This document shows positions 16,650-58,361 of a DNA stretch of 64,000 bases, piece by piece (within the stretch, counting starts at the first letter, position 1; the number at the start of each line of letters is the position of its first letter). Position numbers and translations under genes: made by a program. Location: assembly GCA_965637545.1 (NCBI GenBank), contig OZ281497.1:28954001-29018000 (forward strand), written 5' to 3'. This stretch comes from Phallusia mammillata (Eukaryota). The notes under the pieces are model-generated. The model searched no databases and was not told the DNA's origin. It worked only from the letters and a program-made list of their open reading frames with translations.

Positions 16650-17194
16650 TTACATGGAAGTTGTCTCTTTTGCAGGATAGTATTTTAGACGATCAGGAAT
16701 TTCTTCATCCTTAAAAACCTCATACAAACGAACAAGGAGTTGGGGCACAGGTTCGAGAAAAGCAACTCCAAACTTCTCCCAACCATATTCTGGATTATAA
16801 CCAAACTCCCCCATTTCTTTTTGAGTAAGGTTGTGATGACTTTTCTGTAATGTTTATTAGCCAATAACAGAACTTTTACAGAAACATAGCAATGGGGGAT
16901 TGTGTGTTTAATTAAAAAATTAGCTTTTAAAAAAACTCATTTGATTGCAAGCGTAAGTCGTGTATTTAAAATAATAGCTACCTTGTTTCTAATAACTTTA
17001 AGAAAGTCTACGACAGTTTCACATTTCGTCACTTTGTGTTTTTTGTCGGAAAGAACTGATTCCGGTAAAAGCTTTACGGAAATTTGAAATTTTTCTTCGC
17101 TGTCGGGATTGTCCTGTAATAACTTGACTGGATATTCCTCTATTTGTGCTATGAGCTTGGATGTTGGGTCCTTCTCAAAAAATCCATACGCATC
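16650..17194 (-). CDS. KEN (kinase-extension nuclease) endoribonuclease domain, exons 16982-17194 and 16650-16844
   Basis: Follows HPAFWKTEDKLNFLR directly. Translates ...ETVVDFLKVIRNK|KSHHNLT...FLEPVPQLLVRLYEVF..., matching IRE1 SVRDLLRAMRNKKHHY / FPHLL and RNase L TVGDLLKFIRNLGEH. Stop TAA at 16650-16652. Confidence 0.88.
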
Positions 17195-20100
17195 CTAAAA
17201 TGTTTAAAATATTGGTATTCGTGTAGCCTACTTGTTTATTATATCATTTAATTTAACCAAAATACACGATGGCCGCTTTACATTGGTAAATTTACTAAAG
17301 TCTAATATATAAATTTATTAAAGTCTAATAGTGTAAATTGGGAGGTTTTAACACAACAACACCCTATTTTTTGTCCTGAGTGCGACCAAGTACAACTAAC
17401 AAATTCAAACCAAGATAGACAATTACGTCATTAGTGTAAACAAAATTAAAAAAATATGTACATTAACCTAGATCAATCCGGAAACGATTAGATAAAAAAA
17501 TTATCCGGTTTATCCGATGTTGTTTTTTAAGTCCTACGTTATCTATACAGTGGTTGTACAAATCAGTACAAATCACCTTATATGGGATCAGTAACTACAC
17601 AATATTATCTCAATAAAAAAAAATCCATTGATATATTGTAACGCATGTTGGCATTGAGTATATAAAACACGGGCCCCAACACGCGGCCCGCGGGCCAGAT
17701 GTGGCCCTCGAGGCAATTTTCCATGGCCCGTGGCGTCATTAGCAAATAAAAAAATGTTAATATCTTGTCAAAGATGACCCAAGTTACTTTTGTTTTACTC
17801 ACTCGTCGAGTGTTCAAAAAGGAAAATTGTTAAAACTTTAACTCACACCGATATGTCTACGTTAAAAATTACAAATTTATTTTACATATACATGTATTAT
17901 TATTGTGACAAAATAATTCAAACTTAGTCCGATAACTCTCATGATGAAATTATTATTATGATGAAATAATGCGAACTTAGTCTGATCACAGCGTAAAGTT
18001 AAAAATTCGTTTAGTTTCTTGTGTTTATGGCATAGACTTAGCGAAGGAATAAGGAACGTTTACGTTTCTGAAGGCCAACCAACATTTCTTGACACTTGTG
18101 TAGGCTGCATGGACTATTTCAGAAGCATAAGACAGTCGTTTCCAAACCATTTCATTACATAACAGACGTTTTGTAATTTGCCCGAGCTGGACTAGCAGTC
18201 CAAGATAAAAAAGAAATCAAATGCTTCCATTCATTGTCACGTGTCATGACATAAAAAGCATAGAACAACACGCAAATAAGATTGTAAAGCCATGAGCTCA
18301 TGGAGGTCAGCGAAAATAGCGTATTTAATCACTAAGAAACCGAGTACTCTAGTTTGGAAAGAGCTGACATAGAGTTATACTTTTATAGTAATGTAACTAC
18401 ATATTTTTGTGCGATTGGTGTAGCGCAGAGTAGTTCGAAAATTGCTCCGGGACAATTTTTGTGTTTGAGACCCCTGACCTAAAACATCTGCGACGAACCG
18501 CACAATTGACTGTTACGCCAAACGTGCGATTTTAATGGCGATCAATTAATCGAGTGTTTACGCTATGTAATGTTATAAACAGTGGAAAGCAATGAAGCGT
18601 AACAAGTAGACAACAGTAAACATTTATATTTTAGCATTTTACTGCAGCATGGTTTGATGCATAAAATTGCTATTTAAGCGTAAAACAATCCGGATTAGGA
18701 GATGTGGAAAGAACAATTTTCCAGGCTAGGCAAAGATCCGGGTAAAATATTCAGGTTAAACCGAAAGGTTTAGTTAAGAAAACATTACAAATCATCTGCA
18801 CCTAAAGTTTTTTTTTTCCGAATAGGGCAAAGATAACCCCAAAAAGCTGTATAGCAGCACGGCGGTATTTGCGTATAGTCTTAGGCTATCAGAACATGCG
18901 CGTCACGGAAATGTAGTTATTGTAAAAACACATATTAGGGAATGTAAGGGTAATCATTTGCCCCTCTATACCAAAACTTTATAGCACAATTTACAAGTAC
19001 TACAGCTACGATTAAGTGCATGGTTGGGAGTGAGCTATGAACAATATGGTTATCGATAAAAACGTTCTCAAATATAAAAACTGTAAAGACGCATTAAATT
19101 TGACACAAGATTTTTCCAGTAAAGCACAAATTCTTACTCGAAGAAAATTCAGTTTGTCCTCAGTTTTCCAAAATGCAGGATGTTTTGCCACCATTTGAAT
19201 TGTTGGACGTGAGTCGACTTTTAATTGCAGCATTGATTCTATCAAGCTGCTCATAGTAATGTGATGTTCGTTTTTTCTGTCTGAAACATTAAATGCACAA
19301 TAAGTTAAGGTTTATTACTTCACTTATCACTTCTCAAATGGAAATGACGCAACACAAGCGGTTTAATTTTACCTGACAGATTTATTGCACATCAAGTAAT
19401 ATGAATTGTTTGCTTTTCGATATCAAAAATTATTGTAATACACAGCGCGTAAATATGCATAAACAGAAACGATATTTCAATTAGGCATAGAATGTGCCAA
19501 TTATTAATATTTATCGTCGGTAACAGCAGTTTGTTAACTGTCTAAAAAACTTAAAAAATAACAATATTACGATTCTATACACATGCTATGGGTATCCATA
19601 ATAGGGGGATTTCGCTTAATAATTCATTCACAACTTTACTATAGCTTACTTTTTAGAGGCTGAAGGTTGGAAGGGTTGCCTTCTGTCATGTTGTACCGTT
19701 GTTTATTTTTATCACCAAAGGGATGGTCACCTTCACTCAGAACGAAGTAAAAAAACAAACCAAGGACGTAAATATCAGATTCTTCATTCTACGTCAAAAA
19801 TATTATTTGTTTGTTTATTTGCAACTCGTGAAAGTATTACTGCCCAATTGACTACTTGTCAGCGCGTTCATGCAGTGACCTTTTCCTTAAGCTGACATGT
19901 TTATGAACCTGTGAATCAATTCTCTGTGCAGCTTGGTACAGCATTTGAGGCAAACTGTCCTCGTTTGAGCATAAATTTAGCAAAAAGCGTTACCACAATT
20001 CTAACAGGTCAACCAAAAACCGCTATGACTTAGTCTCCAATCAAATAACAATTTGGGCTCTTGGGGACCAACAGGCTTATAAACACAAAAAAATGAAAAT

Positions 20101-23100
20101 TACCAAATTATGCTATGCATGCAAAAACTTGTAAAGGGTTACATAGATCTTACAAAGTCTCCATCATAATTTTCAGGTGCCACAAAGTTTTCCGCACCGG
20201 CTTTACCATCAAAAAGTGATTTTCCTGTATCCAATTCGCGGCAAAACCCAAAATCACCAACTTTGACGTTTCCATCGAATGATATCAAAAAATTATGAGG
20301 TTTTAAGTCTCGATGTACTGAAACACCAAACAGTGCATAACACTAAGAATTGTTGTAAGCTTATTACCAAAACAGCAACCAAACTTACAGTTTAAAGATC
20401 TCTCAAGCCAATAAACAAGGAAAAAAACAAAATAAAATTAAAAAGGTTTGACATGAAGTTCATTAACACATACGCACAAGCGGATGTTCACAACACGCTG
20501 CAAATCCTTTTTTTGTCGAATTGTCAAATCAGTTTATTATTTTATAACATCACTACCGGGTTTTTAATGAATACCTATAGTATTTTGGTTGTATGAGTTT
20601 TTTTTTGACATTTCCACCGGTTTTAAAAACCTGTTGATATAATATATTCAAAACATAATTTATGATCACATATAAGTTTTTATCAGTTTTGTATTTGATT
20701 AAGTAGACTAAAACGTAACAATAGATTTTAAATAACTCACCAAAACCTTTTTCGTGTATGAACATGACTCCTTTTACAGCATCCACCAAAATCTTTTGTT
20801 TATCAATAAATATGCATTCTTCCTTATTGGCAAAGTTCTTTTTATCATTGAAATACTACAAATATTAAAGAATGGCTTTTAAAGTTGAACTTTCTTTGCA
20901 TATCAGAATTTGACATGCTACGCAGTACATGTTGACTAGTTTAAATATATATGATCTAAACATGCCACCTTAAACGCATATAAACATTCAGCAAATTTGC
21001 TGCAATATTGTCGTTGTTTTGCGATTTTTAAAAATAGTGAAAATTTATATACATACATCATAGACAGACGTGCGACACATCTCCATCACAATGTTTGCTG
21101 TTGTTTCTTTAATACATATGCCGTAGTAGCGGACAATGTTTTCATGATTCAATTTGGACATAGTTTTTGCTTCCAACACAGCATCATTAATATGGTACAT
21201 GGAATTATCTAGTTCTTTCATAACTAACTGCTGTTCATCTTTAACTCCTTTGCACCTGTAATTAAAAAGATCAAGTCTGTAAAAATTATTTAGTATGCTA
21301 GGTTTTAGTGCAGCAACATTTACTTGTATATTCGTGATCCTGGTGTTCCTTTGGCAATGAGTGCACCCTTTTCGTACTTCACACAAAAATGCGGAGTATT
21401 CGTATCTGCGCAAAATCTGTTTGCTATGTATTTCATTTATTATTGAACACGATGTTTCATATTTAGCAAAACATTTTTATGATATGATTACAGGTATGTT
21501 AAAGGAGGATGAATAGGCTGAATCAGAAACAAACCTGCTTCTAATTTTTCCTGCTTGTTGCTCTGGATAAAAAAAACATTAATGAGAAATAAAATTAAAG
21601 TGTAACAAAAAACACCACTTGCAAGCTTCAGATATTATTTAAAAAAGCGTAACAGATTATGTTTTTTGTACAACATACCACGTATATTTGTGTGTGGTTG
21701 TATATGATCCATGGATCTGACTTCAAAGTTGATTCATCAAGTTTTGGTATTCCTTCTAAATAAATAACACGAATGTCGCAAAACTAACAAGACCATTTTT
21801 TGGCAAAATCACACGGCCTAAGGTTTCCATAGCGTTAAGGTGTAAAACAGGGGTTCTTAACCAGGGGTGCACGCACCCCCAAGGGGTGCGAGAACTGTTC
21901 CTAGGGTGTGCGGGGATGCTGAATCAGTAAGGTTGGTTAGGTCTATTCTATTTAAACGATTGCAGAAGGGGGAGCCAAAATTGGTTGGTGATTTGAAAGG
22001 GGGTGCGAAAATTGGTTGGTGATTTGAAAGGGGTGCAGCAAGGAAAAAAGGTTAAGAACCACTGGTATAAAAGAACAAATCGATGAAAATTCATTTGATG
22101 TGGTTGGTGTGAGAAGCAGAGTTTCGCAACCAAATAGAGGATTAAACCAGCAAAGTAACTAAGCAAAGTGCATTTGACAGACTACTTTGTAACAACTTCC
22201 AAAGGATGTAGACATGTACATTGGGCCAAATGTACATCAAAATGCACTAGTTGTATTTGGCAGCATGAAAGTGCTGTGCTTCTTTATAATTTTATAAGTA
22301 TACCAAATAAGCTTAGATGAATATCATTAGTGCGAACATTTTTCCACCTGCAGAGCGTTGAAAAGCCTGTGCATAGTGGCTTTAATTGATTCGAAAAAAA
22401 TGATATGTTTGTATTTGAAAAAAAAATTACACCAAGAAGAAAGGAAAAAAACTCAGCTTATGTTTATTTTAAAGCCGTTGTTTGTATTTTTACGATTGGT
22501 TAATTTACAGACAGCTGTTTGGAGTTGATTTCGGGGCTTTGTTAGTGTGTTGCGGCGATCTCCCTAAGGGGCCCGTGAGATAGTTTCAGGGGGTCTATGA
22601 GGGTTGATTAAACTGCTACCCAAAAAAGTATAATAACGTATTATGCAAGAAACGAAAAACATAGAAAGACTTACGGAAAATTGCGTTGGGGGTCCGCAGA
22701 CCCATAAAATGTATACAAGGGATCCGTGACCCAACTGGTTTACAATTTGATATGTGTTCAGGTGAATTGGGCTAGAAAGTGTGAGGCGGAATGTTTACCT
22801 TCACTTGCATGAATATACTGCTGTTTCAGTCATTTTAGCTTTACCATTACTGATGACAGCAGTTATTTGTCAATGCAACAACTGCTGTAAAAGCACTCTA
22901 ACTTTGGAAGTTGGGGCTTGCTGACCGATATTTTGACTTTATGTGGCCCTCAACTGCATTCACATTTGTCGTATGATTGGGCGATTTAACCAAATCAATG
23001 GACAACATATATGTGAGAATCAGTGCAATTAACATTGGGAATGCTTGGAATTGTGTTTTTTTTGCTACCTTCTATTAATTGGGTTTCAAAATTTTACTTG

Positions 23101-26100
23101 TTGTTGTGTAATGATACATAATAAACATCCCATGTACAAAGACTTAAATTTAATATGGGTGTAGCTATTTGGTAAACACTGAAATAAGTTATGGCGTCAT
23201 GAGCTAATTAGTAACGTAATTGAAAAAACAGACATCAAGTTTTGTAGGGAATTGTTTGTAAAACAACTTGGAACTAACAATTATCACGTAAACATGATTA
23301 AACCACAGTTTTATGAAAAAGTATAAATAAAATGACGTCATTTTGTAAGTGATGACGTCGTCGAATATTTTTTGTCTTTAATTTGTGGAAAATTTTATAC
23401 CTAACAACTTTCCCACAGAAAGTTTTTGCCAATCTATTACCGATTTTGCTTGAAACAAGATACATATATTTCGCCTACACAGACATCGTCAGTTTCCAAA
23501 CCACTGCAAACAACGTAGGTTGAATAATAGAGATCAGAGGTTAAAGCAAAACATAAAATAGTAAACAGCTAAAACAAGTAGGAATAAAACCTAACACTTC
23601 ACATTAGATTTTTATTAAAGCTGACTCTGCCTGTGTAGGTATAACATAACTTTTGATTGTTACAAATTCGTGTTTATTGTTTTTGATTTAAAAGATTGCT
23701 TCTTTATTACTCAAATAAATAACCCATTTACTGCAGTAAGTTTAGTTTGCAATCAAATTACGTTTACCTATCATATCGGTGAACGATCCAGAAATACGAG
23801 GATCCGTAGCAACTGGCTTTGACTTTGTATGTGGCAGAAACATCTGCATTTGTTTCGATGAGGAAGTTATAACAGGGTGCCTGGGTGGGGGCGTTTTGTT
23901 ATCGCAAGAATTTTGGGGAGCTAATGGAGACGAGCAGTGCGCTTGTTCAGATATTGAGGTACGTTGTTGTGATAAAGGCTGTTGACTTTGTTCACTCTCT
24001 TTTCTGGAATCTGTAACAATTCTTGGTCTGCAAAATATAAAGCATGCAATTCAATTGTTTTAAGGTTGATAAATCCATGCAATTTCAAGATGTAAAAAAA
24101 ACTTTCAGCACCTCGAAAACCAACGGAACTTTTGTGAAAGTGTAGACAAAAAACGGTTCGTTGCAGAAGGCTTTACATTTGTTTGTTGCTGAGTTGGTGC
24201 AGTCTTGGAAGGGATTGGGTTTTGTTTGGGAAAGAGGGATCTTACTGGAATATTCGATGAAGTTTGGTTTTGCAAGGCAAGCGGAACAGTAAACTAAAAC
24301 ACACAGTAAGTTGTTCAAGTGTGACAATTTCTTTTCATTTATTGAAAAGTTGGAACAAGTTTTTGTGACGATAAGAATTGTCACTTTGTGACATTTGTTG
24401 TCAAAACGCTGGAGAGATATTTGTTATATTACCGGTTTGTTAAGATTTTCCACTCCAACGCACTCCGAGGTTTTTACTCCCAGTTTTTCGACGTCTTCAC
24501 TGCCGATATCACATCCCTCCAGTATAAGTGTCTCAATGTTTAAAGTACCACGCGCCAGTAATGGTATTCCCCTGTGGCCGATCTTGTTGTAGGAGAGATC
24601 GAGTTTTTTCAGCTGATTTTAATGGAACAAATAACATAACATTTAACATAGTCAACAATCCAACAAACTTAATTTTATTGCATATATTTAAACGAAAATA
24701 ACACATGTTGTGTTATTTAATACTTTTCATAAATGTAGCATATAAGTTAATAAAAGTTGGGTGAGAAATTTATTCGAATTTGAGAACACGGATTGTTGTA
24801 CAATCCGTATGAGGTTTAGCTTGAGTTAACAGTGCACGCGGATTTCTTATAACGTTTGGCCACATATATCAAGCAATTCATAACTCTGCGGTGTTTTCCA
24901 AATGTCTCCAATCAGTTAACGTATCATTCAGTTAAAAAACTTCATATTACCGGTGCCACTCTGTGTTGAATCACGAAGAGAAGATTCTCGAAGTCAACTG
25001 GAAGGAGAGATGATTCTCTAAGGTCGAGCTCATCAGGAAGTAAGGAGGCCACAGTTGAAGCAATCTCCGGATCATTTGACTCACGAGCCCAGCTGCAAAC
25101 TCGCATGATTTCATTTTTATTGTTGACCGTGGGTTTGGAATGAATGAATTTTGAAAGCAATAATTTCTTTTGCTCCCAATCCGGATGAGAGCTTTCAGGA
25201 ACAAGTGGCTCGAGTTGATGAAAAACCGAAGAATCGCAAATCCCGAAAACAAACTTGGATACAACTTCCCATCTGTCGTCTGCAAGTTGTTCGAGGACTC
25301 TCTCAAACTGGTCAAGGGACATAACTATCATCAGGTAGAAACCAACAAAAAACTCCTGCCAGATGAGATGAGAGAAATATCGAACTTTGTGACCATCCAA
25401 TATGGTCAGCTTGAGATTCCCATGCTTTGTAACTGACGTGTATGTAAATGCATCAGCTGTGCATTCCTTTATACCTGCTTTTACGAATGCCTTTGCCTTG
25501 AACGCAATCTCCATCTTTAGAAATGCATCATAGGCCAATTTTGCCAGTTTGTCCAACTCACCTTCCTGGCCCCTCATATGATTGGTTGTGAGATATTGAC
25601 CACAAGTGAAAGCAAGGACTCGAGTGAGTGAAACAAACTGAATATCTCCATCGTAATTCATCATGTAGCATACAGTCAATATAAAATTGACAGGAACATA
25701 GCAATAAGCAAATACTTCGCGGTTTTGCTCCAGCTTTTGTTTTATATCGTTGTATTTGTCTCCACATATCTGACGTCCAAGTTCCTCTTGTGATGGTGGA
25801 GTCAATCCAAGTATTTGAACAATAAACCTCGGTCGATATGAAGGATGGAGCTTGTACAGTTGAGTTGGTCGTGACGTGAAAATCTTTCGAGCACGTGGAA
25901 GCAAGTTTCCTCCCGCCAAATGTTTTAGGTAGTTTTCCGCTCTGGACTTTGAATGTTGTAGGGGTTGGGCAACTTGTGTGGAAAATGATTTAAAAGCTGC
26001 TTCGTCAAAACCGTCAAAAATAATTACAACATTTGGATCATTGCAAATGGAATTGATAACGCTTTTTTCTTGTTCCGAGGAGCAAACTTGTTCAATCGAC

Positions 26101-27344
26101 ATGGCGGAGAGAAGAAACTCAAGAAGTTTCATCTTCTTTTTAAAATCGATGTGCCTGACCTCAATGTAGAAGAAAAAGGAAATCTCTCCGCACAACTCAC
26201 CCCTTAAACCTTGGATGGCCCACTTTTTGGCTGAGGTCGTCTTTCCTATTCCAGCTTGTCCAACCACACCGACCACGTTTCCATGTTTTTCCATGTAATC
26301 TTGTTTTGCGTTTTTTGCGTCAATTTTGAATTTATTTTCCGCTTCATGTTCTGCTGTTTTTTTTGCGCGATAAAACATTTCTTCACCAGTTATATCACTT
26401 TGCGTTATCTTGTAAACATTTGCTAGTTCCTTTCTGCTGCGATAATGTCCTTCTGCTTGAAACTCATCATCAATTCGCTGTGGTTTGTCTACTATGGCAA
26501 GGTTGGCAGGTGTTATTTTCCGTTCAGCAATGTTTGCTAGGGACGATTCTTCACTAGCGATAACTTCCACCCGTTGTTTGAGTAACAACATCAGATCTTC
26601 AACAAACTGAACATCTTGATGTGTTTCGTTTGTTTCTGGTGTTGTTGCATACAGGTTAACTATTTTAATAGGAGCGTTGTAAACTGGTCCACGTGTGTAG
26701 ATGTTCGTGTCACCTTGCTGCCAATGTAAATCTTTAGTTGAAAACTTATAATGAGATACATCATCAGGACTTTGTGTTAATTTAGATTGAACACCATCAT
26801 TATCCTGTCCCTGGATTGAGTTGGCTCGGGGTTCAGGACCATCTGGTCCTTGGGTGAAATGAGGTTGGGGTTCGGCATCATCTGGTCCTTGGGACAAGCT
26901 GAGTTGGGGTTCAGCATCTTCTGGATCTTGAGATAAGCTGAGTTGGGTTTCAGCATCATCCTGTCTTCGGGTCAAGCTGAATTGTGGTTGAGCATCATCT
27001 GGTTCTTGGAAGGAGCTAAATTGGTGCTCAACATTATGTGGTCTTTGAGTGAAGGGGGATTGGCGTTCTGCACCTTCTGGTCTTTGAGTGAAGGGGGATT
27101 GTCGTTCTGCATCATCTGGTTCTTGGATCAAGCTGGGTTGGGGTTGAGCATCATCTGGCCCTTGGGTCAAGCTGGGTTGGGGTTTAGCATCGTCTGGTTC
27201 TTGGGTAAAACTTGCTTGGGATGTAGCATCATCTGCTCCTTGGGTAAAGCACGATTGGAACTGGGGTCTTTGAGATAAGTTGGACTTGGCAACCTTGTTA
27301 TCCTTTTTTAGGTTTGTATTGGTTTGTTTTTTCAAAAATTCCAT
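16650..27344 (-). CDS. Predicted 14-exon gene, 1456 aa: 13-aa repeats + NACHT + LRR + linker + IRE1/RNase L-type kinase + KEN endoribonuclease (NLR-kinase-RNase fusion)
   Basis: Exons 24951-27344, 24433-24612, 24112-24293, 23768-24027, 21679-21755, 21535-21562, 21324-21405, 21057-21255, 20741-20855, 20154-20317, 19650-19788, 19138-19280, 16982-17194, 16650-16844. Every intron is GT..AG, phases match (0,0,2,1,0,1,2,0,1,0,1,0,0), and the total of 4371 nt is one open frame ending in TAA. The weakest joint is the 2012-nt intron 21756-23767. Confidence 0.8.
17668..18476. mobile_element. Older copy of the 37184-38133 hAT MITE family, in intron 12 of the NLR-kinase-KEN gene
   Basis: Shares internal blocks (gcgtaaagttaaaaattcgtt; taaggaacgttt..gaaggccaaccaacatt) and the right TIR tgagacccctg; degenerate TSD. 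Confidence 0.8.
19138..21755 (-). CDS. IRE1/RNase L-family protein kinase domain (8 exons)
   Basis: Spliced translation shows IAKGTPGSRIY (G-loop), LVMK (beta3 Lys), LEAK (alphaC Glu), HENIVRYY, VHRDLKPHNFLIS, VKVGDFGFCREL, AGAENFVAPE, SDIYVLGLFFYFVLSEGDHPFG, RPTIQMVAKHPAFW. These match IRE1 motifs HRDLKPHNILIS, EGSHPFG and HPFFW. Confidence 0.93.
21848..22064. mobile_element. hAT MITE in intron 4 of the NLR-kinase-KEN gene
   Basis: TIRs CAGGGGTTCTTAACC / GGTTAAGAACCACTG, TSD GTGTAAAA/GTATAAAA, internal short tandem duplication. Confidence 0.88.
23768..24293 (-). CDS. NLR1 low-complexity linker exons (24112-24293 and 23768-24027)
   Basis: Open P/S/Q/T-rich frames with canonical splice sites: FTVPLALQNQ...KFRWFSR and PRIVTDSRKESEQ...EQAHCSSPL...FTDMI. 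Confidence 0.75.
24433..24612 (-). CDS. NLR1 LRR exon (RI-like leucine-rich repeats)
   Basis: Phase 0-0 exon of 180 nt translating LKKLDLSYNKIGHRGIPLLARGTLNIETLILEGCDIGSEDVEKL...NKP. Homologous to the exons at 52541-52702 and 51025-51186. Confidence 0.9.
24951..27344 (-). CDS. NLR1 exon 1: N-terminal repeats and NACHT NTPase with helical domains
   Basis: 800-aa ORF with Walker A GQAGIGKTT, Walker B VIIFDGFDE, sensor-1 KIFTSRP, YCYVPV motif and winged-helix FSHLIWQEFF. Donor CCG|gtaata at 24951. Confidence 0.95.
26739..27245 (-). repeat. Coding tandem repeat, about 13 copies of a 39-bp/13-aa unit (consensus TQGPDDAEPQxSL)
   Basis: Visible in the ORF translation (TQEPDDAKPQPSL, TQGPDDAQPQPSL, SQGPDDAEPQPHF...) and in DNA as recurring gcatcatctgg at 39-bp spacing. 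Confidence 0.92.
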
Positions 27345-30569: not shown

Positions 30570-33500
30570 TGTAGCGCCCTGTAATATCCTACATGCATAG
30601 GACGCGAAACGAACCTTTTTCTTTATTGTCTAGTGTTGTCTTTTTATGTGTGGTGTTGTGGCTCTCGCGTCATTCTATCGACTTGTTTAAATAAAGTGTA
30701 GGTCGCCTCATTGGTGACCACCGGCGTGATAACATGAGCACAGAATCTCAAAACGCAGTTGCCTTAAAGTTACCAACCTTTTGGCCAACTCAGCCTAAAT
30801 TATGGTTTCAACAAGCAGAGGCACAATTTGCTTTAAGAAATATCACTGCGGACATTACGAAATACTATTACGTTCTGTCGGCGTTGGATCAGGACACGGC
30901 AGGTCGGTTAATTGACCTTTTGACAATCCGCCGGAAGACAACAAGTATGTAGGTCTTAAAGAACGTTTGCTCTCCATGTTTACTTTGACAAAGTCGCAAA
31001 GACCACAATGCCTACTTCAGATGCCTCTTTTAGGCGACAAAATGCCATCAGCGTTGATGGATGACATGCTAATTTTATTGGATGAACAGAAAGAGTGTTT
31101 TTTGTTCGAAGAACTGTTTCTGCAACCGATGCCAACATATGTAAGAACGGGACTTGCCACCCAGAAATTTACGGACTATCGAGCTATGGCTCGGACAGCT
31201 GATGTTTTGCTGCGTGCCGGACGCTATGATTCTGAGAACGCTGTTGGTTTTAATCTTAAGCCACGAATGCGGCAAAACAAACCTAAAAAGCCAGATGGAA
31301 GCGGAATGTGTTTTTACCATGATCGATTTGGTATGAAAGCTAGAACTTGCCGCCCTCCATGTTCTTGGCAAGCAGGAAACGAGGAAGCCGACTGGCGCTG
31401 GCTGCTGCGTTGGCCGGTACAGCAAACAGCCTTTTCCACGTGTTTGACCGCACTTCTGGTCACAGTTTTCTTGTCGATACTGGCGCTGAGGTCAGTGTTT
31501 TTCCTCCGTCGGGACGCGAACCCCGCATGAATCCTTTAGGCCAAACATTACTTGCTTCCCAAGGATGCGAGATCCGCACCTATGGAGCGCTGTGTTTCAT
31601 TGGATCTGCCTTCGGGAAAATTTAAATGGCCGTATATTCTCGCTGATGTCTCGAAGCCTTTGCTGGGAGCGGATTTCCTGCGGGCACACGCGTTTTTGGT
31701 AGACATCAAACACAGACGCCTTGTCAACGCCAAGACGTTTTTTAGCAATGCTATCGGCAAAATGGAACAATCAGCACCACAGTTAAACGCACTAGCTAGC
31801 AGTGTCTCTGAGTACACCCGTCTATTGGGCAAATTTCCGCAAATTACAACTTTCCCCCACACAGTGTGGAGCACTTCATCATCACCAGTGGCCCACCTGT
31901 ACATTCCAAGGCTAGGAGATTGCCTCCTGAGAAACTGGCGATTGCTGAGAAGGAGTTTGACCATATGTTAAAACTTGGAATTATACGACGATCCTCCAGC
32001 CCGTGGTCATCTCCAAAGCACATGGTCCCGAAAGCTTCGTGAGACTGGAGACCATGTGGTGATTATCGACGCTTGAACGCAGCTACACTGCCCGATCGAT
32101 ACGCGATTCCTCATGTTCAGAATGTTTCCGCTCGTTTAGCGGGGCTCAACGTTTTTTCAAAGATCGACCTAGTGCGTGGGTATCACCAAGTTCCCATGGC
32201 ACCAGCAGACATTGCAAAAACGGCGGTTGTAACTTCCTTCGGACTGTTTGAATTTCTCCGTATGCCATTCGGCCTCAAAAATTCGGCTCAAGCTTTCCAG
32301 CGACTAATGGACACTGTCTGTCAACCTTGGATTTCGTTTTCGTATATTTGGATGATATCCTCGTGGCCAGTACATCGGTTGCTGAGCACCTTACGCACCT
32401 GAGGCAACTTTTCGAACAGCTTACTATTCATGGTTCAGTTATTAACGTGGGCAAATGCAAATTTGGCGTATCAGAAATTAATTTTTTGGGACATAGGGTA
32501 TCAAAACAGGGGGTAAAACCACTTCCGGATAAAGTAAAAGCTATCCAAGAGTTCCCACGCCCAACAACCATCAAAGGTCTGCAGCAGTTCGCGGGTATGA
32601 TTAATTTTTACCATCGCTTTATTCCTGAATCAGCAAAAATCATGTCCCCTATATACTCAGCATTTGCAGGAAAACCGAAATGGCTCTTTTGGAATACCTC
32701 TTTGAATTCAGCTTTTGAAAACGCCAAGCAGGCTTTAGCTGAAGCAACTATGCTGCACCACCCGTTACCTCAGGCTCCAACTGCTCTCACTACAGACGCA
32801 TCGGAGCATTCTGCTGGCGCTGTTTTGCAGCAACTCATTGAAGGCAAGTGGCGTCCACTGGAATTTTTTAGTAAGCGGTTTCGTCTACCGGAAACAAAAT
32901 ACAGTGCATTTGACAGAGAGATGCTTGCGTTTTTTCTATCGGTACGTCATTTTCGATATTTTCTAGAAGGTCGTCCGTTTGTGGTTTATACCGATCACAA
33001 GCCACTGACATTTGCGTTTTCTAAAGTATCCTCTCCATGGTCTGCTCGTCAGCAGCGACATCTGACCGCCATTTCGGAATTTACCACGGATGTGCGCCAT
33101 GTAGTCGGCAATCGAAATTGTGTGGCAAACACTTTTTCACGTGGAGTAGTTAATGTAGTTCATTTTCCGTTAGATATGGATTACGTTGCTCTCGCGAAGG
33201 CTCAACTTGTCCCAGAGGTTCAAGCCTATCGCACAGCGGTAACTAACCTCAAGCTTGAAGACATTGAAGTCCGACGATCTGGCACAAAGCTCTTATGTGA
33301 CACTTCTCAAAGCAAGCCCCGTCCAATAGTGCCGGCGTCATGGCAGCGGAAAGTTTTCGACGTAATACACGGACAGTGAAATCCATCCATTAGAATCACT
33401 AAGAAACTAATGGCCTCAAAATTCGTGTGGCACGGCTTGCGAAGGCAAGTGGGTTTATGGTTCAACTCTGTCCGTTCCTGAGCATTTTTTGTAAACAAAC

Positions 33501-40123: not shown

Positions 40124-40369
40124 CTGACTGCTCCACGTTAACCAGCAACTGAATGTGCTGTTGGTGGCTTGTTGGTTCTGTGTGAAAGACAATGGGCAAG
40201 TTCTATAGCAATAATCATGCACAATTACCATGGTTTTGTAATTCGTGAATAAATCCTATAATAAAGTCCTATATTAGGCAATGTTTATTGCAAAACATCA
40301 AAGCTATTTGAATAGGTGTAAAAATTTCTATTCAAAATGAATATCATTAGGATGAGAGCGAAACATATA

Positions 40370-42130
40370 TAATCGTAGCAGTTAGAAACAATTGACTTTG
40401 ATATTATGAGATCAAGTCGGGGTTTAATAGGAGACAAGCCCACACACAACGCAGCATTTAGTGTGTCAGTTTTAAGACTGTTTCGTGTCTTCGATTTCGG
40501 TATAGTTACAGTTGAAAAACCTGACTCACAAAGATATGTGGTGGTGAATGGCAAAAGAAATTTAACCGCACGCTCTGACAAGGAAGGATATTCTTTGATT
40601 GTCATCATCCAAAAAGAAGGAAGATCTACTTTTTGATATTGAAACTTGAAAGCACTATCTTCGGACAATTCAATTAGTTTATTTTCAAGTTCTACGGACA
40701 GAGCGACATCCTCCGATGCAGAATTAACAGCAAAGGGATTCCGAATCCATAGGTTTCCAGGACGTGGATCCTCTGGAAAGTAGTGGTCAATTTTTTTCGA
40801 TAGTTGCGCCAAATGATGAATTATGATTTTAGAGACGTCTACATGGGGGATAGATTCGAGGTTTTCACTAAGCAGTGGAAACATATCAAGCCGTTCATCT
40901 TCCACTCTTCTTTTCCAGAGACTTGTATTTTTCTTAAACCCCTCTATTTTATCGGCAACTAAAAATATTGAGCTGTGTCTACCTTGCATTGACACGTTGA
41001 GCTGATTCAACTGGTCAAACATATCGGAAAGGTAGGCCAGTTTTGCACAAAAGTAATTGTTAATGTAATGTTCAGCCAGAGGTGAACGCTGATCCTGGAG
41101 AAATATGTGCACTTCAAGTTTCAGTTCAAAAAGACGATTAAGATACGACCCTTCGAAAGCCACCTAACCTCACTATGGTACATGAGCTGTAAGTGTTCTG
41201 AATCAAGCCTGTCGCACAATGCAGCAAAACGTCTCGAGTGCAGCGCATTCTTCTTAATGTAGTTCACAGTCTTTACAGCTAAATGCATGACACCATGTAA
41301 TTCGGGCGACATCTGCCTTGTAGCCAGGTTTTCTCTATGTAAAAAGCAGTGAGTCCATTTGGCTTGTCCCGCTCTCTCTTGGATTTGTTTTTCAACGCCA
41401 TGATGTACCCCAGTTATTGATGCAGCGCCATCTGTGCACACACCTACACAGTTCCTCCAATCAACAGAATTGTTAGCAAAGTGGGTGTCAAGGCAACGAA
41501 ATACCTCATCAGCAGTTGTTCGAGTAGGAAGTTCTTGGCTAAATAATAGGTCGTCATCAATATTACCATCAGCACAGTACCGTACAAATACAAGTAACAA
41601 AGCTTTGTTGGAAACATCAGTGGCTTCATCCAACTGTGTGGAATAATATGGACTAGACTTAATCCTTTCCAACAGCTGACATTCTATGTCAGCACTCATT
41701 TCATTAATTCGTCTCGTTATAGTGTTGCTGGACAGTGGAATCGACTCAAGTTTAGATGCAGCAGATATTCCCATTACTTCTCGGCACATATCAATAGCAC
41801 TAGGAAGAATTAATTCCTCTGCAATAGTAAATGGCTTCTTGCAGCGATCAACACGAGCAGCCACCATATAACTAGCCTTCAATGCTGACTTTGATTGCGT
41901 GCTAAATAAAGTCATGACTCGCTGCTGTGACTGCAAACCGTCTCCTTTTCTCTCAAAATATTGCTTGCACTTCGCTGCTCTGTGCGGATGGTGTGTGTCC
42001 AAGTGCCTTTTGAGCTTTGGTGGTCTTAGTGCCTTTGAAAAAAAATCTTTGCGCACTCAACACATTGTGCTTTTGCCTCAGATTCACTTCCTGTTCTTAT
42101 GAAACCATAGTATACTAACATGGTAGTCCA
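40370..42130 (-). mobile_element. hAT (Buster/Charlie, ZBED5/SCAND3-like) transposase pseudogene
   Basis: BED finger AQCVEC...LKRHLDTHH, then QLDEATD, GVCTDGAASITG, HCFLHRENLA, EVRWLSKG and LCESGFS motifs across ORFs 41121-42056 and 40285-41163. Frameshifts near 42050 and 41150. Confidence 0.92.
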
Positions 42131-48801: not shown

Positions 48802-51800
48802 CTAACACAAGAATTAGTTTAAGGCAAGTAACTAGAGTTAATTGCCAATCAAGTATGTTGTAATAAATAAAGCAGTATGACGTCATACTACTAATTGCTT
48901 TTAAATGAAAATCGGAAATGTGTTAAATGTGAAAAATATATCTGAGGAAACCTAAACAAAATAACTAACGCTGTGAGATAAAGTTAACAAGTAACAACTA
49001 TACTGATGTGTAGATTTGCTTGGGAATTTAGGTTTGGTGCACAACCTGCGGCTGCTGAAACGAACTTGTGCCACCCTAAAATATGCATTAAAATATATGT
49101 ACTGGTGGCCGTACACTGTTAAATCTCGTTTGCTAGACATTTGGCGTCAAAAAATGATCTAAATGGAAATATATCAACGAAACCATGGAGACACTTGGTT
49201 GTCGTTGGTGAAATACGGACCAGTGATAGGGCCGTCATAGCCAAAAGGTAGTGCACCCAAGCTGTGGCGGCTACCACTGTGTCGTTTGCATATGATGATC
49301 CACACTTTCGTAGTTTATTTTTCTTAGGAGCTTATTGTGTTTCGGGGATAAGTTGCGTTTCTGAATCTTTTCCAAGCTAGATATTTTATTCTAACACGCG
49401 GGTAAAAAAGAACGAAACTTGTATCTTACTATTCGAGACAAAGCTTTTATCTTACTATTTCGTGGTTGTATCCGAGTATTACTATTCGAGATCATTTATA
49501 GAGTCATTTAATTGTGACGACAAAATTACACTCTGACATCAAAGAGGTATATTTAGTAGACGCCAGCCCACGGCTCCGGAGCCGCATGCGGCTCTTCGAT
49601 TACTTGAATTTACTAAATTGTACAACTTTTTATTACAAGTTCTGCGACGATTATGCCGATCACAAAAGCTAAAAATTCCTGTAAAATAATTTGAGCGAAC
49701 CCTTTTCCAGTAGTTGTGTACAACGGCGTTTCAACACTATATATGAAATGTGAAGTCGGAAAGAGACGAACTGGCGGTATGTGGGTTAACATGCAGTGCG
49801 ATAGATGCCATTTTCTTCGCAGCGTGTGTAATAACATATGTTTGTTAATATTTGTAAAACAATACAGTGTCAAACAAAGAAATAAAATCAACGTCTAAAG
49901 AAAACCGGGCATTTAATGCTAAGTGGAGAGATGGATTTGCTTGCACTGCTGACGAGACTGGTTTACTAGATATGCGATGACAAACTGGATAAGAACCCAA
50001 AGTCGTATGTCGTGAGACAAAAAAACGTTTTTGCAGTGGCATATCCTTTTTAACATGTTAAAACGGCCTTTAGGTTCCCAGCGTTTTTTTTACTATTTGA
50101 AATTGGTCCGACTTGCCCTTTGAGCGGCAAAGGTTGGCGACCCCTGTACTAGACAAAAGAACAATAATTTCGACAGTTCAAAGCGCCGTTTGTCAATCTA
50201 AACAATTTCTGCAAAGAATATTCGCGAGATTCAGTAATAAAGTTGATGCACAACTTAGTATGGCTGAACATAATTGTTTTGTTCTGTTGTCAAAACTTCG
50301 CACTTTAGTTAAAATGTTGAATACCTGAACGATACGAAACGTTATGGTAGAGTATTTAAAAAGAAACGCACTTCAACGAATAGCGTGATCTCATAGGTCA
50401 TTACACCTACAACTCACTGATCTAAATCCACAATATTTTTATGTCTATACTGCGGCAGCGAAACGAGGTAAGAAACAGAGCGTGAATATTTTGTCAAATT
50501 TTGTCCAGCATGTCATTAAGTGTATCCGAAATCTATTTGCACTGTAAGTATGGAAACAAAGAATATGTTATGGACTGACGTGCGCATAATGTTTGGTTAT
50601 ATGTGGTTGTGCGTTGCAAACATATGCTTTGGTTATTATAACTTAAATTAATGTTAAAATTAGGAAAATGCAAACTGACATGTTCTTTAATTTAGTTTAA
50701 CACAGGAAGCGCCCTGTGCGGACATTTTAACCATCAAAGGTGCATGGATGACACGACCAAGATCAAAAAAGTTACATTTAATGCTTTCTTGTGGCATACC
50801 ACTCATTACTATATATACTATGCAGTATATTATAAGGACTGATTCTCAACAATTTTACAAACAATTAGAGACCACTGGGCCATTTGCATATTCGTTTAAC
50901 TACCATTTGAGTTCATATAGCATTTCAATTTAGCGTAATGTGATAAGTTTATCATTTCTGCAACAAACAAACAATCTTTACTATTGAAAAAAATATTTCG
51001 CACAACATAGATTTCAACTTTTACCGGCTTTGTTAGCTTTTTCACTCCATCGCAGAGTTTCTCGAAGCCTTCATTTCCGATCCAACATCCCAACAGTATA
51101 AGTTCTTCCATGTTGTGAAGGCAAGGACTCAGCGAAGCTGCTCCCGTGCTGCCGATCTCGTTGTGGGAGAGGTCAAGTATCTTCAGCTGATTTTAGTACA
51201 ACAAATATTATCACATTTATCGTAGTGACAAATTGAAGGAAATTAAAACATACAACACAACACATCTTTGGTATACGCCTTGTTACAAATGCGACTTTTT
51301 AACACATAATTTCTGTTTCACTTAAAATTTGGCATTTCCTCAATAAAAGATAATATATGAAAAGTAAGCTGTAGAATGTTTACACTAGTTTTGTTAAAAG
51401 GGTTAACAAACCAACCCAGGCTTTGCTAGCTTGATGTAAGAAATTTATTTAGGTTAATTGTATAGTTTAAATCTCGTGTTAGCGCCGTGAGTTCGTTTCC
51501 ACAATTAATACTTTATCCAAACTCGTACATGAGTTCGGCGACCTGGTGTCATAGTAACACACGAGTAAAACAAGTATGCGCAGCACGTTTGTTTCACTAT
51601 GCGTTGTACGTCATGCTGGATGCAAAAATAAGCTGTAACAAATTTGTTTTGAAAAAAAAATTTGTGTAAGGGACAGTATTCCTTTTACAGATTTTTCGTA
51701 TTTTGTTTGCTTGTCATTATTTCGGTTTGATTCAGCAATTACAATCTTTGGAAATAGTGCCACAATTGTAGTTGAGCAGAAAACAGTTTGTCATGCGTTA

Positions 51801-57800: not shown

Positions 57801-58361
57801 TTGGTGAGGGAGAAGTAGGAGGAAATTTGGATAACCTTTCTTCATCAAAGTCATGTGGAGCAGGCAACTGAGACGAGCAGTGAACCTGTTCAGGTGAGGG
57901 CGACGTATCAGTAGGTTCGATTGATGTTTCTTCATCTAAGTAGTGTGCGGCATGCAGCTGAGACGAGCAGTGAGTTTGTTCCGATGACTGATACACCGTT
58001 ACATGTTGTGTAATGTGTTGTTGATAGACTGGAGCGTTATAAACTGATCCAGTTGTGTGGATGTTTGTGTCTCCAATCTGAGGTGCTTGTTCGCTTTCCT
58101 GCACAAAAAAAAAGATTTGAAGAAGTAAACGGTATGATTTTGTATAATACTTACCAAGTTTAAAACTAAATTCCTGCTCTGTAAATCAACCGGTAAAGGA
58201 TGGCTTGAGCTTGGCTGAGGTATCATAGACCTGGATTCTTCCCTTGCGCTCTGCTGAGATACAACGTCACCCTGTCTTTGGAGTGTGTTTGATTGGGGTT
58301 CAGCTTCATCTAGTTGTAGGACCAAGCGAGGTTGGGGTCCAACATTACCCGGGTCGGCCAT
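48628..58361 (-). CDS. NLR2: predicted NACHT-LRR gene, about 930 aa, paralog of NLR1 without kinase/KEN
   Basis: Exons 58155-58361, 57671-58098, 55887-57546, 52541-52702, 51025-51186, 48628-48801. All GT-AG with matching phases (0,2,0,0,0); 2793-nt open frame ending TGA. Confidence 0.82.
49560..50146 (+). mobile_element. hAT deletion derivative carrying a transposase N-terminal remnant
   Basis: Right TIR GGTTGGCGACCCCTG; 5' ggctccggagccgcatgcggctc subterminal motif; internal frame ENRAFNAKWRDGFACTADETGL resembles GTF2IRD2/EPM2AIP1-type hAT N-termini. Confidence 0.65.
51025..51186 (-). CDS. NLR2 LRR exon B
   Basis: 162 nt, phase 0-0: LKILDLSHNEIGSTGAASLSPCLHNMEELILLGCWIGNEGFEKLCDGVKKLTKP. 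Confidence 0.9.
52541..52702 (-). CDS. NLR2 LRR exon A
   Basis: 162 nt, phase 0-0: LTRLDLSRNEIGNTGAASLGPCLHNTEQLILDGCKIESEGVEKLSDRVKKLTKP. Confidence 0.9.
53735..53895. mobile_element. Partial inverted copy of the 859-1054 MITE family
   Basis: gtactgcggaccg ... cgcggaccggtacc ... agttgccgaccattg mirrors 859-1054. Confidence 0.7.
55172..55363 (-). other. Tandem duplicate of the 3' end of the NLR2 NACHT exon (possible cassette exon or intronic relic)
   Basis: Open 192-nt frame PKLSGKKDILQVCSWAH...IQHRAKP, near-identical to about 55887-56075, with the same gtaata donor and about 60 bp of duplicated intron. Confidence 0.75.
55887..57546 (-). CDS. NLR2 NACHT exon
   Basis: Walker A GQAGIGKTT, Walker B VMIFDGFDE, long stretches identical to NLR1 (ARKIFTSRPTQLYKLHPSYRPRFIVQILGLTP). 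Confidence 0.95.

What the first reader, a model, noticed from the sequence alone, without database searches (positions are those of the whole stretch)
16650..27344. NLR fused to an IRE1/RNase L-type kinase-endoribonuclease (NACHT-LRR-kinase-KEN): a candidate self-contained sensor-RNase
Seen: 14 exons splice with canonical GT-AG sites and matching phases into one 1456-aa frame, from a NACHT NTPase through LRRs into an IRE1-like kinase and a KEN domain. There is no signal peptide, luminal domain or TM segment (so not IRE1) and no ankyrin repeats (so not RNase L). Established: KEN RNases are switched on by dimerisation or oligomerisation (IRE1 by ER stress, RNase L by 2-5A), and NACHT domains oligomerise on ligand sensing. 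Inference: NACHT oligomerisation could cluster the kinase-KEN modules and trigger RNA cleavage, giving a one-gene antiviral or cell-death system. This parallels bacterial STAND-nuclease (Avs) defences; KEN belongs to the HEPN fold. The effector is C-terminal, whereas animal NLR effectors are normally N-terminal death folds. I am not aware of this architecture being described in animals, but could not search.
Basis: partly seen in the sequence, partly recalled or inferred. Interest (0 to 1): 0.96.

Follow-up and report, generated by a model that had tools for sequence, protein, structure and literature searches.

The report
Immune sensor possibly fused to RNase
In a sea-squirt genome, an NLR-type immune sensor gene is followed on the same strand, in a compatible reading frame, by an IRE1/RNase L-like kinase-RNase module that has no sensor or start codon of its own; the two are probably one gene or one operon, but I could get no transcript evidence.

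Summary
The domains are real. The minus strand carries a NACHT exon (27344-24951), one LRR cassette exon (24612-24433) and eight or nine exons of an IRE1-type kinase plus a divergent KEN RNase (21755-16650).

The link between the two halves is unproven. Four RNA runs of the species covered no exon. No NACHT relative in public proteins, up to 2362 aa, carries a kinase or KEN domain.

Indirect evidence favours a fusion:
- The kinase-KEN exons have no ATG of their own.
- The two linker exons (24293-24112, 24027-23768) are diverged copies of an NLR N-terminal exon. They stay open, contain no usable upstream start, and one keeps that exon's splice donor.

The main rival is two genes or an ascidian SL-resolved operon, with the kinase-KEN starting at the ATG at 23849.

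I found no description of NACHT+KEN, but NACHT fused to other HEPN RNases in animals is published, so this would be a new variant rather than a new kind. The scan noted the same architecture on other DNA of this genome (s1-366349); I could not check that locus. Fusion confidence is about 0.5.

The parts
24951..27344 (-). Exon 1 of NLR1, 798 codons, starting at the ATG at 27344. It holds an N-terminal 13-aa (39-nt) tandem repeat at 27250-26828, a degenerate RHIM-like QQGDTNIY motif at 26720-26697, the NACHT NTPase at 26276-25770 (Walker A 26261-26235, Walker B 26030-25998), and helical domains.
   Evidence: ORF; Pfam NACHT E 3.8e-18; tandem repeat; motifs; 71% identity to Phallusia mammillata COS1.5; dN/dS 0.39 against the paralogue NLR2; donor CCG|GTAATA
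24433..24612 (-). Exon 2: a single LRR cassette of 60 codons, phase 0 to 0.
   Evidence: Pfam LRR_6 E 2.8e-7; homologous to the NLR2 cassettes at 52702-52541 and 51186-51025, with the same ..KP|GTA donor. Read-through would stop after 2 codons, and an AATAAA lies at 24343.
24112..24293 (-). Linker exon E3: 182 nt, phase 0 to 2, no ATG. It is a diverged copy of the 3' half of the NLR N-terminal exon 2, and its donor GAG|GTGCTGA is identical to the donor of NLR2 exon 2.
   Evidence: Acceptor and ORF; protein similarity to NLR2 exon 2 scores 50 against shuffles of 29.8+-5.8, 1/500; 10-nt donor match; codon log-odds 0.109 against null ORFs of -0.13+-0.13
23768..24027 (-). Linker exon E4: 260 nt, phase 2 to 1; alternative in-phase acceptors at 24021, 24003, 23994 and 23985. 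It is a second diverged copy of NLR exon 2 and keeps the EQAHCSS peptide motif. It contains the first ATG (23849) that could start a separate kinase-KEN protein.
   Evidence: DNA similarity to NLR2 58024-57960 scores 40 against shuffles of 21.1+-2.3; protein similarity to NLR2 exon 2 (61 against 37.6+-6.9) and to Phallusia COS1.5 (54 against 34.3+-5.7); junction enumeration; ATG scan; donor TAG|GTAAAC
21722..21755 (-). Optional 34-nt micro-exon E5, phase 1 to 2. It is needed only if exon 6 starts at a phase-2 acceptor.
   Evidence: Splice sites. The alternative direct junction 23768/21376 is also in frame.
21057..21405 (-). Kinase N-lobe exon. The acceptor is uncertain (21423, 21405 or 21376). 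It holds a glycine-less P-loop equivalent (ILNNFYRL), the candidate beta-3 lysine in LVMKEL, and the alpha-C helix.
   Evidence: Pkinase / PK_Tyr_Ser-Thr hits; the alignment to the JAK1 kinase starts upstream of 21276; the frame is open for 66 codons upstream and has no ATG
20741..20855 (-). Kinase exon (hinge to alpha-E).
   Evidence: In-frame GT-AG exon; tblastn of the model back onto the window
20154..20317 (-). Kinase catalytic exon: VHRDLKPHN, DFG, activation loop, APE.
   Evidence: Pkinase E 2.1e-12; motifs
19650..19788 (-). Kinase C-lobe exon with the IRE1 signature SEGDHPFGDK.
   Evidence: All 16 PDB hits are IRE1, best E 8.5e-6
19138..19280 (-). End of the kinase and start of the KEN domain (HPAFW..KLNFL).
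   Evidence: 16 of 17 PDB hits are IRE1, E 7.8e-4
16982..17194 (-). KEN domain exon, ending in ..VIRNK.
   Evidence: Ribonuc_2-5A is the only Pfam family reported: 14.4 bits, E 0.043, profile positions 16-72, below the cut-off. No PDB hit and no close relatives.
16650..16844 (-). Last KEN exon, starting KSHH (completing RNKKSHH), with the stop at 16652-16650.
   Evidence: ORF and acceptor; no Pfam or PDB hit on its own

Best explanation
An ascidian NLR gene (NLR1) has captured an IRE1/RNase L-type kinase-KEN module as a C-terminal effector. A single transcript would run through these parts:
- the N-terminal repeat/NACHT exon;
- one LRR cassette;
- two linker exons recycled from an NLR N-terminal exon;
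- a degenerate-P-loop kinase and a KEN (HEPN-fold) RNase.

Inferred mechanism: ligand- or nucleotide-driven NACHT oligomerisation brings the kinase-KEN modules into the back-to-back dimers or oligomers that switch on KEN RNases, so that RNA is cut in the sensing cell.

Shown here: the domains, their order and strand, their intact frames, purifying selection on the NACHT exon, and the NLR origin of the linker. Inferred: the splicing that joins the two halves, RNase activity, and activation by clustering.
For: (1) All parts lie on the minus strand with canonical GT-AG sites, and several paths give one stop-free ORF of 1412-1461 aa.

(2) The kinase-KEN exons have no in-frame ATG. The frames upstream of 21755 and of 21276 are ATG-free, and the best ATG-started feeder exon found between 24430 and 21760 lies inside linker exon E4 and uses the same donor, 23768.

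(3) The LRR cassette ends at the conserved internal-cassette donor, so it needs a downstream acceptor. The next strong acceptor, 139 nt on, opens a 60-codon ORF in the right phase.

(4) E3 and E4 are each significantly similar to the NLR N-terminal exon 2. They are strongly diverged yet still open for 60 and 86 codons. E3 keeps the exact exon-2 donor GAG|GTGCTGA. E4 keeps the EQAHCSS motif upstream of its first ATG. Their codon log-odds (0.11) equal that of the genuine NLR2 exon 2 (0.116) and lie about 1.9 SD above null ORFs. Neither exon has a usable start, so they read as internal coding exons of the upstream NLR.

(5) From established knowledge, IRE1 and RNase L each pair their KEN domain with an N-terminal sensor. 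The 2-kb gap contains no other domain.

(6) Scan notes report the same architecture 8.6 Mb away in this genome. I did not check this.
Against: - No transcript evidence. Contigs of four RNA(?) runs of the species cover only interspersed repeats at 21848-22071 and 22488-22738, and no exon.
- None of the NACHT relatives found (118 and 134 hits, overlapping; lengths up to 2362 aa; including RNA-supported Clavelina, Ciona and Phallusia models) carries Pkinase or Ribonuc_2-5A.
- The paralogue NLR2 in this window has no kinase-KEN, and neither do three related NACHT contigs within 10 kb.
- The linker junctions are not unique, and a micro-exon or an alternative acceptor is needed to keep frame.
- No ATG occurs in any frame between acceptor 24027 and 23849 (read from the sequence), which also fits a 5' UTR.
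- Read-through stops with nearby AATAAA follow exon 2, and follow E4.
- KEN is below the Pfam threshold. The kinase P-loop has no glycines, and the upstream catalytic Tyr of KEN appears to be missing.
Confidence: 0.5

Rival explanations
1. Two cistrons. NLR1 would end after its LRR cassette (read-through stop at 24427-24425), or in E3 (stop at 24107-24105), or just after E4 (stop near 23744). A separate sensor-less kinase-KEN protein would start at the ATG at 23849 in E4, or at an unrecognised short first exon in 23600-21760. The two could be independent genes or an ascidian SL-trans-spliced operon whose downstream acceptor is 24027. The products might still work together in trans.
For: - About half of Ciona genes are SL-trans-spliced, and its operons juxtapose cistrons with no intercistronic DNA (PMC1488885).
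- No ATG in any frame lies between acceptor 24027 and 23849, and the first ATG is in the kinase frame.
- The E3 read-through stop lies 78 nt before that acceptor.
- AATAAA lies at 24343, and there is a cluster at 23708, 23678 and 23616.
- All annotated ascidian NLR relatives lack a kinase or KEN domain.
- A solo KEN expansion is known in the tunicate Oikopleura (PMC3710099).
Against: - It leaves unexplained why E3, and the part of E4 upstream of 23849, stay open, keep an NLR peptide motif and a conserved donor, and score as coding.
- A kinase-KEN with only about 27 residues ahead of the kinase would have no regulatory domain, unlike IRE1 and RNase L.
- AATAAA is expected by chance about once per 850 nt at this base composition.
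Confidence: 0.38
2. The kinase-KEN block is a silent or decaying relic next to an NLR, and the in-frame chain is a coincidence of many GT/AG choices.
For: No RNA coverage; no close relatives of the KEN or N-lobe exons in 1.8-5.8 billion proteins; degenerate P-loop; KEN below the Pfam cut-off.
Against: All eight or nine exons are open with canonical splice sites, and they keep HRD, DFG, APE, HPFG, HPxFW and RNxxxH. Two exons still hit only IRE1. Coding log-odds are 0.15-0.39, though these exons were part of the training set.
Confidence: 0.07
3. This is the 3' half of the canonical ER-stress sensor IRE1, with luminal and TM exons lying further upstream and the NLR nested in an intron.
For: The kinase C-lobe and the kinase/KEN junction hit only IRE1.
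Against: - The similarity is far too low for the canonical orthologue: E about 1e-5 per exon, KEN exons undetectable by phmmer, and an N-lobe closer to JAK/Tec kinases.
- No hydrophobic or luminal-type exon was found between the NLR and the kinase.
- Upstream of NLR1 lie transposon remnants and NLR2 exons.
Confidence: 0.02

Closest known systems
IRE1 (ERN1/ERN2, yeast Ire1)
   Same: The kinase C-lobe is IRE1-like (VHRDLKPHN, SEGDHPFGDK), followed directly by HPxFW and a KEN domain with an RNxxxH active-site motif. IRE1's RNase is switched on by self-association.
   Different: There is no signal peptide, luminal domain or TM segment. The sequence is much more diverged, with a glycine-less P-loop and an N-lobe that scores best against JAK/Tec kinases. 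The upstream part is, at most, a NACHT-LRR.
RNase L
   Same: It is a cytosolic innate-immune protein in which a sensor domain controls dimerisation of a (pseudo)kinase-KEN RNase. It shares the R-N-x3-H motif.
   Different: There are no ankyrin repeats or 2-5A pocket. RNase L is reported absent from the invertebrates surveyed (PMC6307210). Here HRD and DFG are retained.
Ascidian NLRC3-like NLRs (Phallusia mammillata COS1.5; the NLR2 paralogue at 58361-51025 of this window)
   Same: The NACHT exon is 71-78% identical. They share the low-complexity N-terminus with the GDTNI(H/Y)T.G.VYNAP motif and the same LRR cassette exons.
   Different: Those proteins end after the LRRs. None of the listed relatives carries a kinase or KEN domain.
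Animal NACHT-HEPN fusions (CXorf38 and DZIP3/hRUL138 HEPN families in cnidarians, cephalochordates and oyster; Anantharaman et al. 2013, PMC3710099)
   Same: A NACHT NTPase and a HEPN-fold RNase lie on one animal protein, proposed to couple sensing to RNA degradation.
   Different: The HEPN family differs: here it is KEN, with its obligatory kinase partner, in a C-terminal position after the LRRs. NACHT is not among the KEN fusion partners listed in that survey.
Bacterial STAND-nuclease defences (Avs and related STAND-HEPN proteins)
   Same: The logic matches: STAND oligomerisation activates a fused nuclease effector.
   Different: Those are prokaryotic, with different nuclease families and mostly N-terminal effectors. 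There is no kinase module.

Membership tests
NLR (NACHT-LRR) receptors | NACHT NTPase with intact Walker A and Walker B | tested here: met
   Pfam NACHT 66.3 bits; GQAGIGKTT and VVIIFDGFDEA
NLR (NACHT-LRR) receptors | C-terminal leucine-rich repeats | tested here: met
   One cassette exon only (two repeats); LRR_6 30.5 bits; homologous to the NLR2 cassettes
NLR (NACHT-LRR) receptors | N-terminal death-fold effector (CARD/PYD/DD) | tested here: not met
   No such Pfam hit in exon 1. The N-terminus holds 13-aa repeats and a degenerate RHIM-like motif.
IRE1 | Signal peptide, luminal sensor domain and TM segment | tested here: not met
   No Pfam domain in exon 1 other than NACHT, and none in ORF fragments of 23767-21756; the highest hydrophobic window (1.66) lies inside the NACHT/helical region, not a likely TM helix
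IRE1 / RNase L (kinase-KEN) | IRE1-type protein kinase or pseudokinase domain | tested here: met
   Pkinase hits per exon; exons 9 and 10 hit only IRE1 in the PDB. The P-loop glycines are absent.
IRE1 / RNase L (kinase-KEN) | KEN (Ribonuc_2-5A) domain directly after the kinase, with the R-N-x3-H catalytic motif | tested here: inconclusive
   Ribonuc_2-5A scores 14.4 bits on one exon against a cut-off of 23.3. The HPAFW..KLNFL start aligns to IRE1, and RNKKSHH is present. The whole spliced domain could not be scored because it has no reference.
RNase L | N-terminal ankyrin repeats that bind 2-5A | tested here: not met
   No ankyrin hit anywhere in the locus
STAND/NACHT-HEPN RNase fusion proteins | NTPase and RNase encoded on one polypeptide | tested here: inconclusive
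   In-frame GT-AG paths exist, but the RNA contigs cover no exon and no fused homologue was found
STAND/NACHT-HEPN RNase fusion proteins | Oligomerisation-dependent RNase activity | not testable with these tools
   Needs biochemistry

The most novel reading that the evidence does not exclude
A chordate (ascidian) NLR carries an IRE1/RNase L-type kinase-KEN endoribonuclease as a built-in C-terminal effector. It would have been assembled by exon shuffling from a neighbouring NLR N-terminal exon, and it would belong to a small family with at least two loci in this genome. That would make it an animal STAND receptor that answers ligand sensing by cutting RNA itself. It would be independent of OAS/2-5A and of ER stress.
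Probability: 0.45. Interest if true: 0.8.

Novelty: new variant of a known kind. Interest (0 to 1): 0.62.

Why it matters
KEN RNases are known in only two regulatory settings: IRE1, which responds to ER stress, and RNase L, which responds to 2-5A and is reported absent from the invertebrates surveyed. An NLR-driven KEN RNase would be a third way of wiring this effector. It would be an animal counterpart of bacterial STAND-nuclease defences. It would also show how invertebrate chordates without the OAS/RNase L axis could achieve infection-triggered RNA decay. Even if the two halves prove to be separate cistrons, the finding stands in a weaker form: a sensor-less IRE1-like kinase-RNase whose 5' exons derive from an NLR N-terminal exon, sitting directly downstream of an NLR, suggests a functionally coupled pair that is worth testing.

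Tried and rejected
1. RNA evidence. Only coded runs of the same species were offered, and none held the exons. Laying four of them on 19300-25299 gave contigs only on interspersed repeats, so this test was uninformative.

2. KEN exon 17194-16982 against 1.84 billion representative proteins gave two weak, probably spurious hits. Against the PDB it gave none. The last KEN exon against the PDB gave nothing relevant. The ESM Atlas gave no meaningful neighbour.

3. The kinase N-lobe exon against 5.8 billion proteins gave no candidate.

4. A metagenome scan with the catalytic kinase exon returned 80 loci at about 40-50% identity. None had KEN similarity.

5. Three contigs carrying NACHT relatives at 40% identity, fetched with 10-kb flanks, had no kinase-KEN.

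6. A wider NACHT search from a 1350-aa Clavelina NLR, which allowed hits up to 2362 aa, found no Pkinase or KEN architecture.

7. I rejected my first exon-6 acceptor (21276). The JAK1 alignment and the 66-codon open frame show that the N-lobe starts further upstream.

8. E3's apparent stop (..RC*) is not evidence of termination. The TGA lies inside the conserved donor GGTGCTGA, which NLR2 uses as a splice site.

9. Steps left out. Pfam, PDB, homology and AlphaFold runs on the whole spliced kinase-KEN or the full-length protein were not done.

Full report
**What is there**

The finding lies on the minus strand. An 800-aa ORF (27344-24942) starts with an ATG that follows an in-frame stop. It contains:
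- a 39-nt tandem repeat with 10.8 copies;
- a NACHT domain (Pfam E 3.8e-18) with intact Walker A and B motifs;
- the helical domains typical of NLRs.

Its closest public relative is Phallusia mammillata COS1.5, at 71% identity. The next relatives are NLRs of Clavelina and Ciona, so the window comes from an ascidian.

A paralogue, NLR2, lies at 58361-51025 of the same window. It is 85% identical in DNA over the NACHT exon, and dN/dS between the two is 0.39. Both NACHT exons are therefore under purifying selection.

Exon 1 ends at a canonical donor (24951). The next exon, 24612-24433, is an LRR cassette (LRR_6). It matches NLR2's two cassettes, down to the ..KP|GTA donor.

**The kinase-RNase half**

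Between 21755 and 16650 I rebuilt eight or nine GT-AG exons.
- Single exons hit Pkinase.
- The exon with SEGDHPFGDK hits only IRE1 among 177,635 distinct PDB sequences (E 8.5e-6).
- So does the exon spanning the kinase end and HPAFW..KLNFL, in 16 of its 17 hits (E 7.8e-4).
- The next exon gives Ribonuc_2-5A as its only Pfam family, but below the cut-off (14.4 bits, E 0.043).
- RNKKSHH straddles the last junction.
- HRD, DFG and APE are present.
- The P-loop equivalent (ILNNFYRL) has no glycine, and the N-lobe aligns best to JAK/Tec kinases.

I read this as a diverged IRE1/RNase L-type kinase-KEN module. It is not the canonical IRE1, because the similarity is far too low and no luminal or TM exon exists. 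I could not score the whole spliced domain, because a spliced sequence has no reference.

**Can the two halves be joined?**

Yes, in several ways.
- 27344-24951
- 24612-24433
- 24293-24112
- 24027-23768
- 21755-21722
- 21405-21057
- 20855-20741
- 20317-20154
- 19788-19650
- 19280-19138
- 17194-16982
- 16844-16650

Variants give 1412, 1434 and 1461 aa. I could not reproduce 14 exons. The linker admits 41 frame-compatible junction pairs. The 34-nt micro-exon is dispensable, because 23768 also joins 21376 in frame. So the existence of an in-frame path is not strong evidence on its own.

**What the linker is**

Following a scan note (s1-399187), I tested the linker against NLR2. NLR2 has this structure:
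- exon 1: 58361-58155
- exon 2: 58098-57671 (phase 0 to 2)
- NACHT exon: from 57545
- two LRR cassettes

Linker exon E4 shares a DNA patch with NLR2 exon 2 (score 40 against shuffles of 21.1+-2.3). It is also similar at protein level to NLR2 exon 2 and to the N-terminus of Phallusia COS1.5 (1/500 and 4/500 shuffles reach the observed score). The similarity includes the EQAHCSS motif.

Linker exon E3 is also similar to the 3' half of exon 2 (1/500). It has the same phases (0 to 2) and ends in the identical donor GAG|GTGCTGA.

The linker is therefore two diverged copies of an NLR N-terminal exon. Both copies are still open, for 60 and 86 codons. Their codon log-odds (0.11) equal that of the genuine exon 2 (0.116) and lie about 1.9 SD above chance ORFs. 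Neither has an ATG upstream of 23849.

**Weighing fusion against two cistrons**

In favour of one gene:
- The LRR cassette ends at an internal-type donor. The next strong acceptor opens E3 in phase.
- E3 keeps a conserved donor that is in phase with E4.
- E4 keeps an NLR peptide motif upstream of its first ATG.
- The kinase-KEN exons contain no start codon. The best ATG-initiated feeder exon in 24430-21760 is inside E4 and uses the same donor.
- The 2-kb gap encodes no other domain.
- From established knowledge, IRE1 and RNase L each pair their KEN domain with a sensor.

Against one gene:
- No RNA contig of four runs touches any exon.
- None of the NACHT relatives found in two searches (118 and 134 hits, overlapping), up to 2362 aa, carries a kinase or KEN domain. 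NLR2 has none either.
- No ATG occurs in any frame between acceptor 24027 and 23849. With a read-through stop of E3 just 78 nt upstream, this looks like a Ciona-type SL-resolved operon boundary. Such operons are documented for ascidians (PMC1488885).
- AATAAA signals follow the possible read-through stops, although they are frequent in DNA this AT-rich.

I put the fusion at about 0.5, the two-cistron or operon model at about 0.38, and the remainder on a silent relic or a nested canonical IRE1.

**Mechanism (inferred)**

If the halves are fused, NACHT oligomerisation would cluster the kinase-KEN modules. KEN RNases are activated by back-to-back dimerisation or oligomerisation of the kinase-KEN unit. 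The retained R, N and H of the Rx4-6H HEPN motif are compatible with activity. The glycine-less P-loop and the apparently missing upstream Tyr (scan note s1-399216, and my own reading) raise the possibility of altered or reduced activity.

If the halves are separate, the kinase-KEN protein would have only about 27 residues ahead of the kinase. It would then need a partner, plausibly the neighbouring NLR, to be controlled.

**Comparison and novelty**

I found no paper that describes a NACHT-KEN protein or mentions NACHT together with Ribonuc_2-5A. The HEPN survey of Anantharaman et al. lists these partners for KEN: kinase, ankyrin, CCCH, UBI and BRCT. It also reports a solo KEN expansion in the tunicate Oikopleura. 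The same survey describes NACHT fused to other HEPN families (CXorf38, DZIP3) in cnidarians, cephalochordates and oyster, and proposes RNase L-like RNA degradation for them (PMC3710099). RNase L itself is reported absent from the invertebrates surveyed (PMC6307210). The concept is therefore known, and the KEN version after an NLR would be a new variant.

The scan had already noted the same architecture 8.63 Mb upstream in this genome (s1-366349), and an NLR with a C-terminal kinase 4.2 Mb upstream (s1-411729). I could not read those loci, so I count them as leads only.

**Dead ends**

- The KEN and N-lobe exons have no close relatives in the large protein sets.
- The metagenome scan returned no locus with KEN similarity.
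- Three related NACHT contigs lack kinase-KEN.
- The Atlas search was uninformative.

Noticed in passing
window 51025-58361 (minus strand): NLR2 is a second NLR. Its parts are exon 1 (58361-58155), exon 2 (58098-57671), a NACHT exon (57545-55887) and two LRR cassettes (52702-52541, 51186-51025). It is closer than NLR1 to Phallusia COS1.5 (72%), and it has no kinase-KEN downstream.
   Followed up: partly
window 58080-58057 (NLR2) and 26720-26697 (NLR1): NLR2 and Phallusia COS1.5 carry a RHIM-like core, PQIGDTNIH, followed by TG.VYNAP in the NLR N-terminus. NLR1 has the degenerate form QQGDTNIY. This matches other scan notes on RHIM-like NLR N-termini in this genome. Both linker exon copies have lost the motif.
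   Followed up: partly
window 55166-55370: An extra copy of the last ~200 nt of the NACHT exon (about 80% identical to 24945-25140) lies between NLR2's NACHT exon and its LRR cassettes. It may be a duplicated exon fragment.
   Followed up: no
window 21848-22071 and 22488-22738: Interspersed repeats lie inside the 2-kb gap or intron. They occur in many unrelated RNA contigs of all four runs, with different flanks. There is no other copy in this window, and they are not tRNA-derived according to ARAGORN.
   Followed up: partly
window 26828-27250: A 39-nt tandem repeat of 10.8 copies encodes 13-aa Q/P/D-rich units (..PDDAEPQPS.TQ.) at the NLR1 N-terminus.
   Followed up: partly
window 40285-42056 and 30967-33379: Transposon remnants lie between the two NLRs: a hAT dimerisation domain ORF on the minus strand, and an LTR-retrotransposon RT/RNase H fragment on the plus strand.
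   Followed up: partly
window 21057-21405: The N-lobe of the kinase scores best against JAK1/BMX/BTK tyrosine kinases, whereas the C-lobe exons hit only IRE1. The P-loop position reads ILNNFYRL, with no glycine, which suggests a pseudokinase-like or nucleotide-independent N-lobe.
   Followed up: partly
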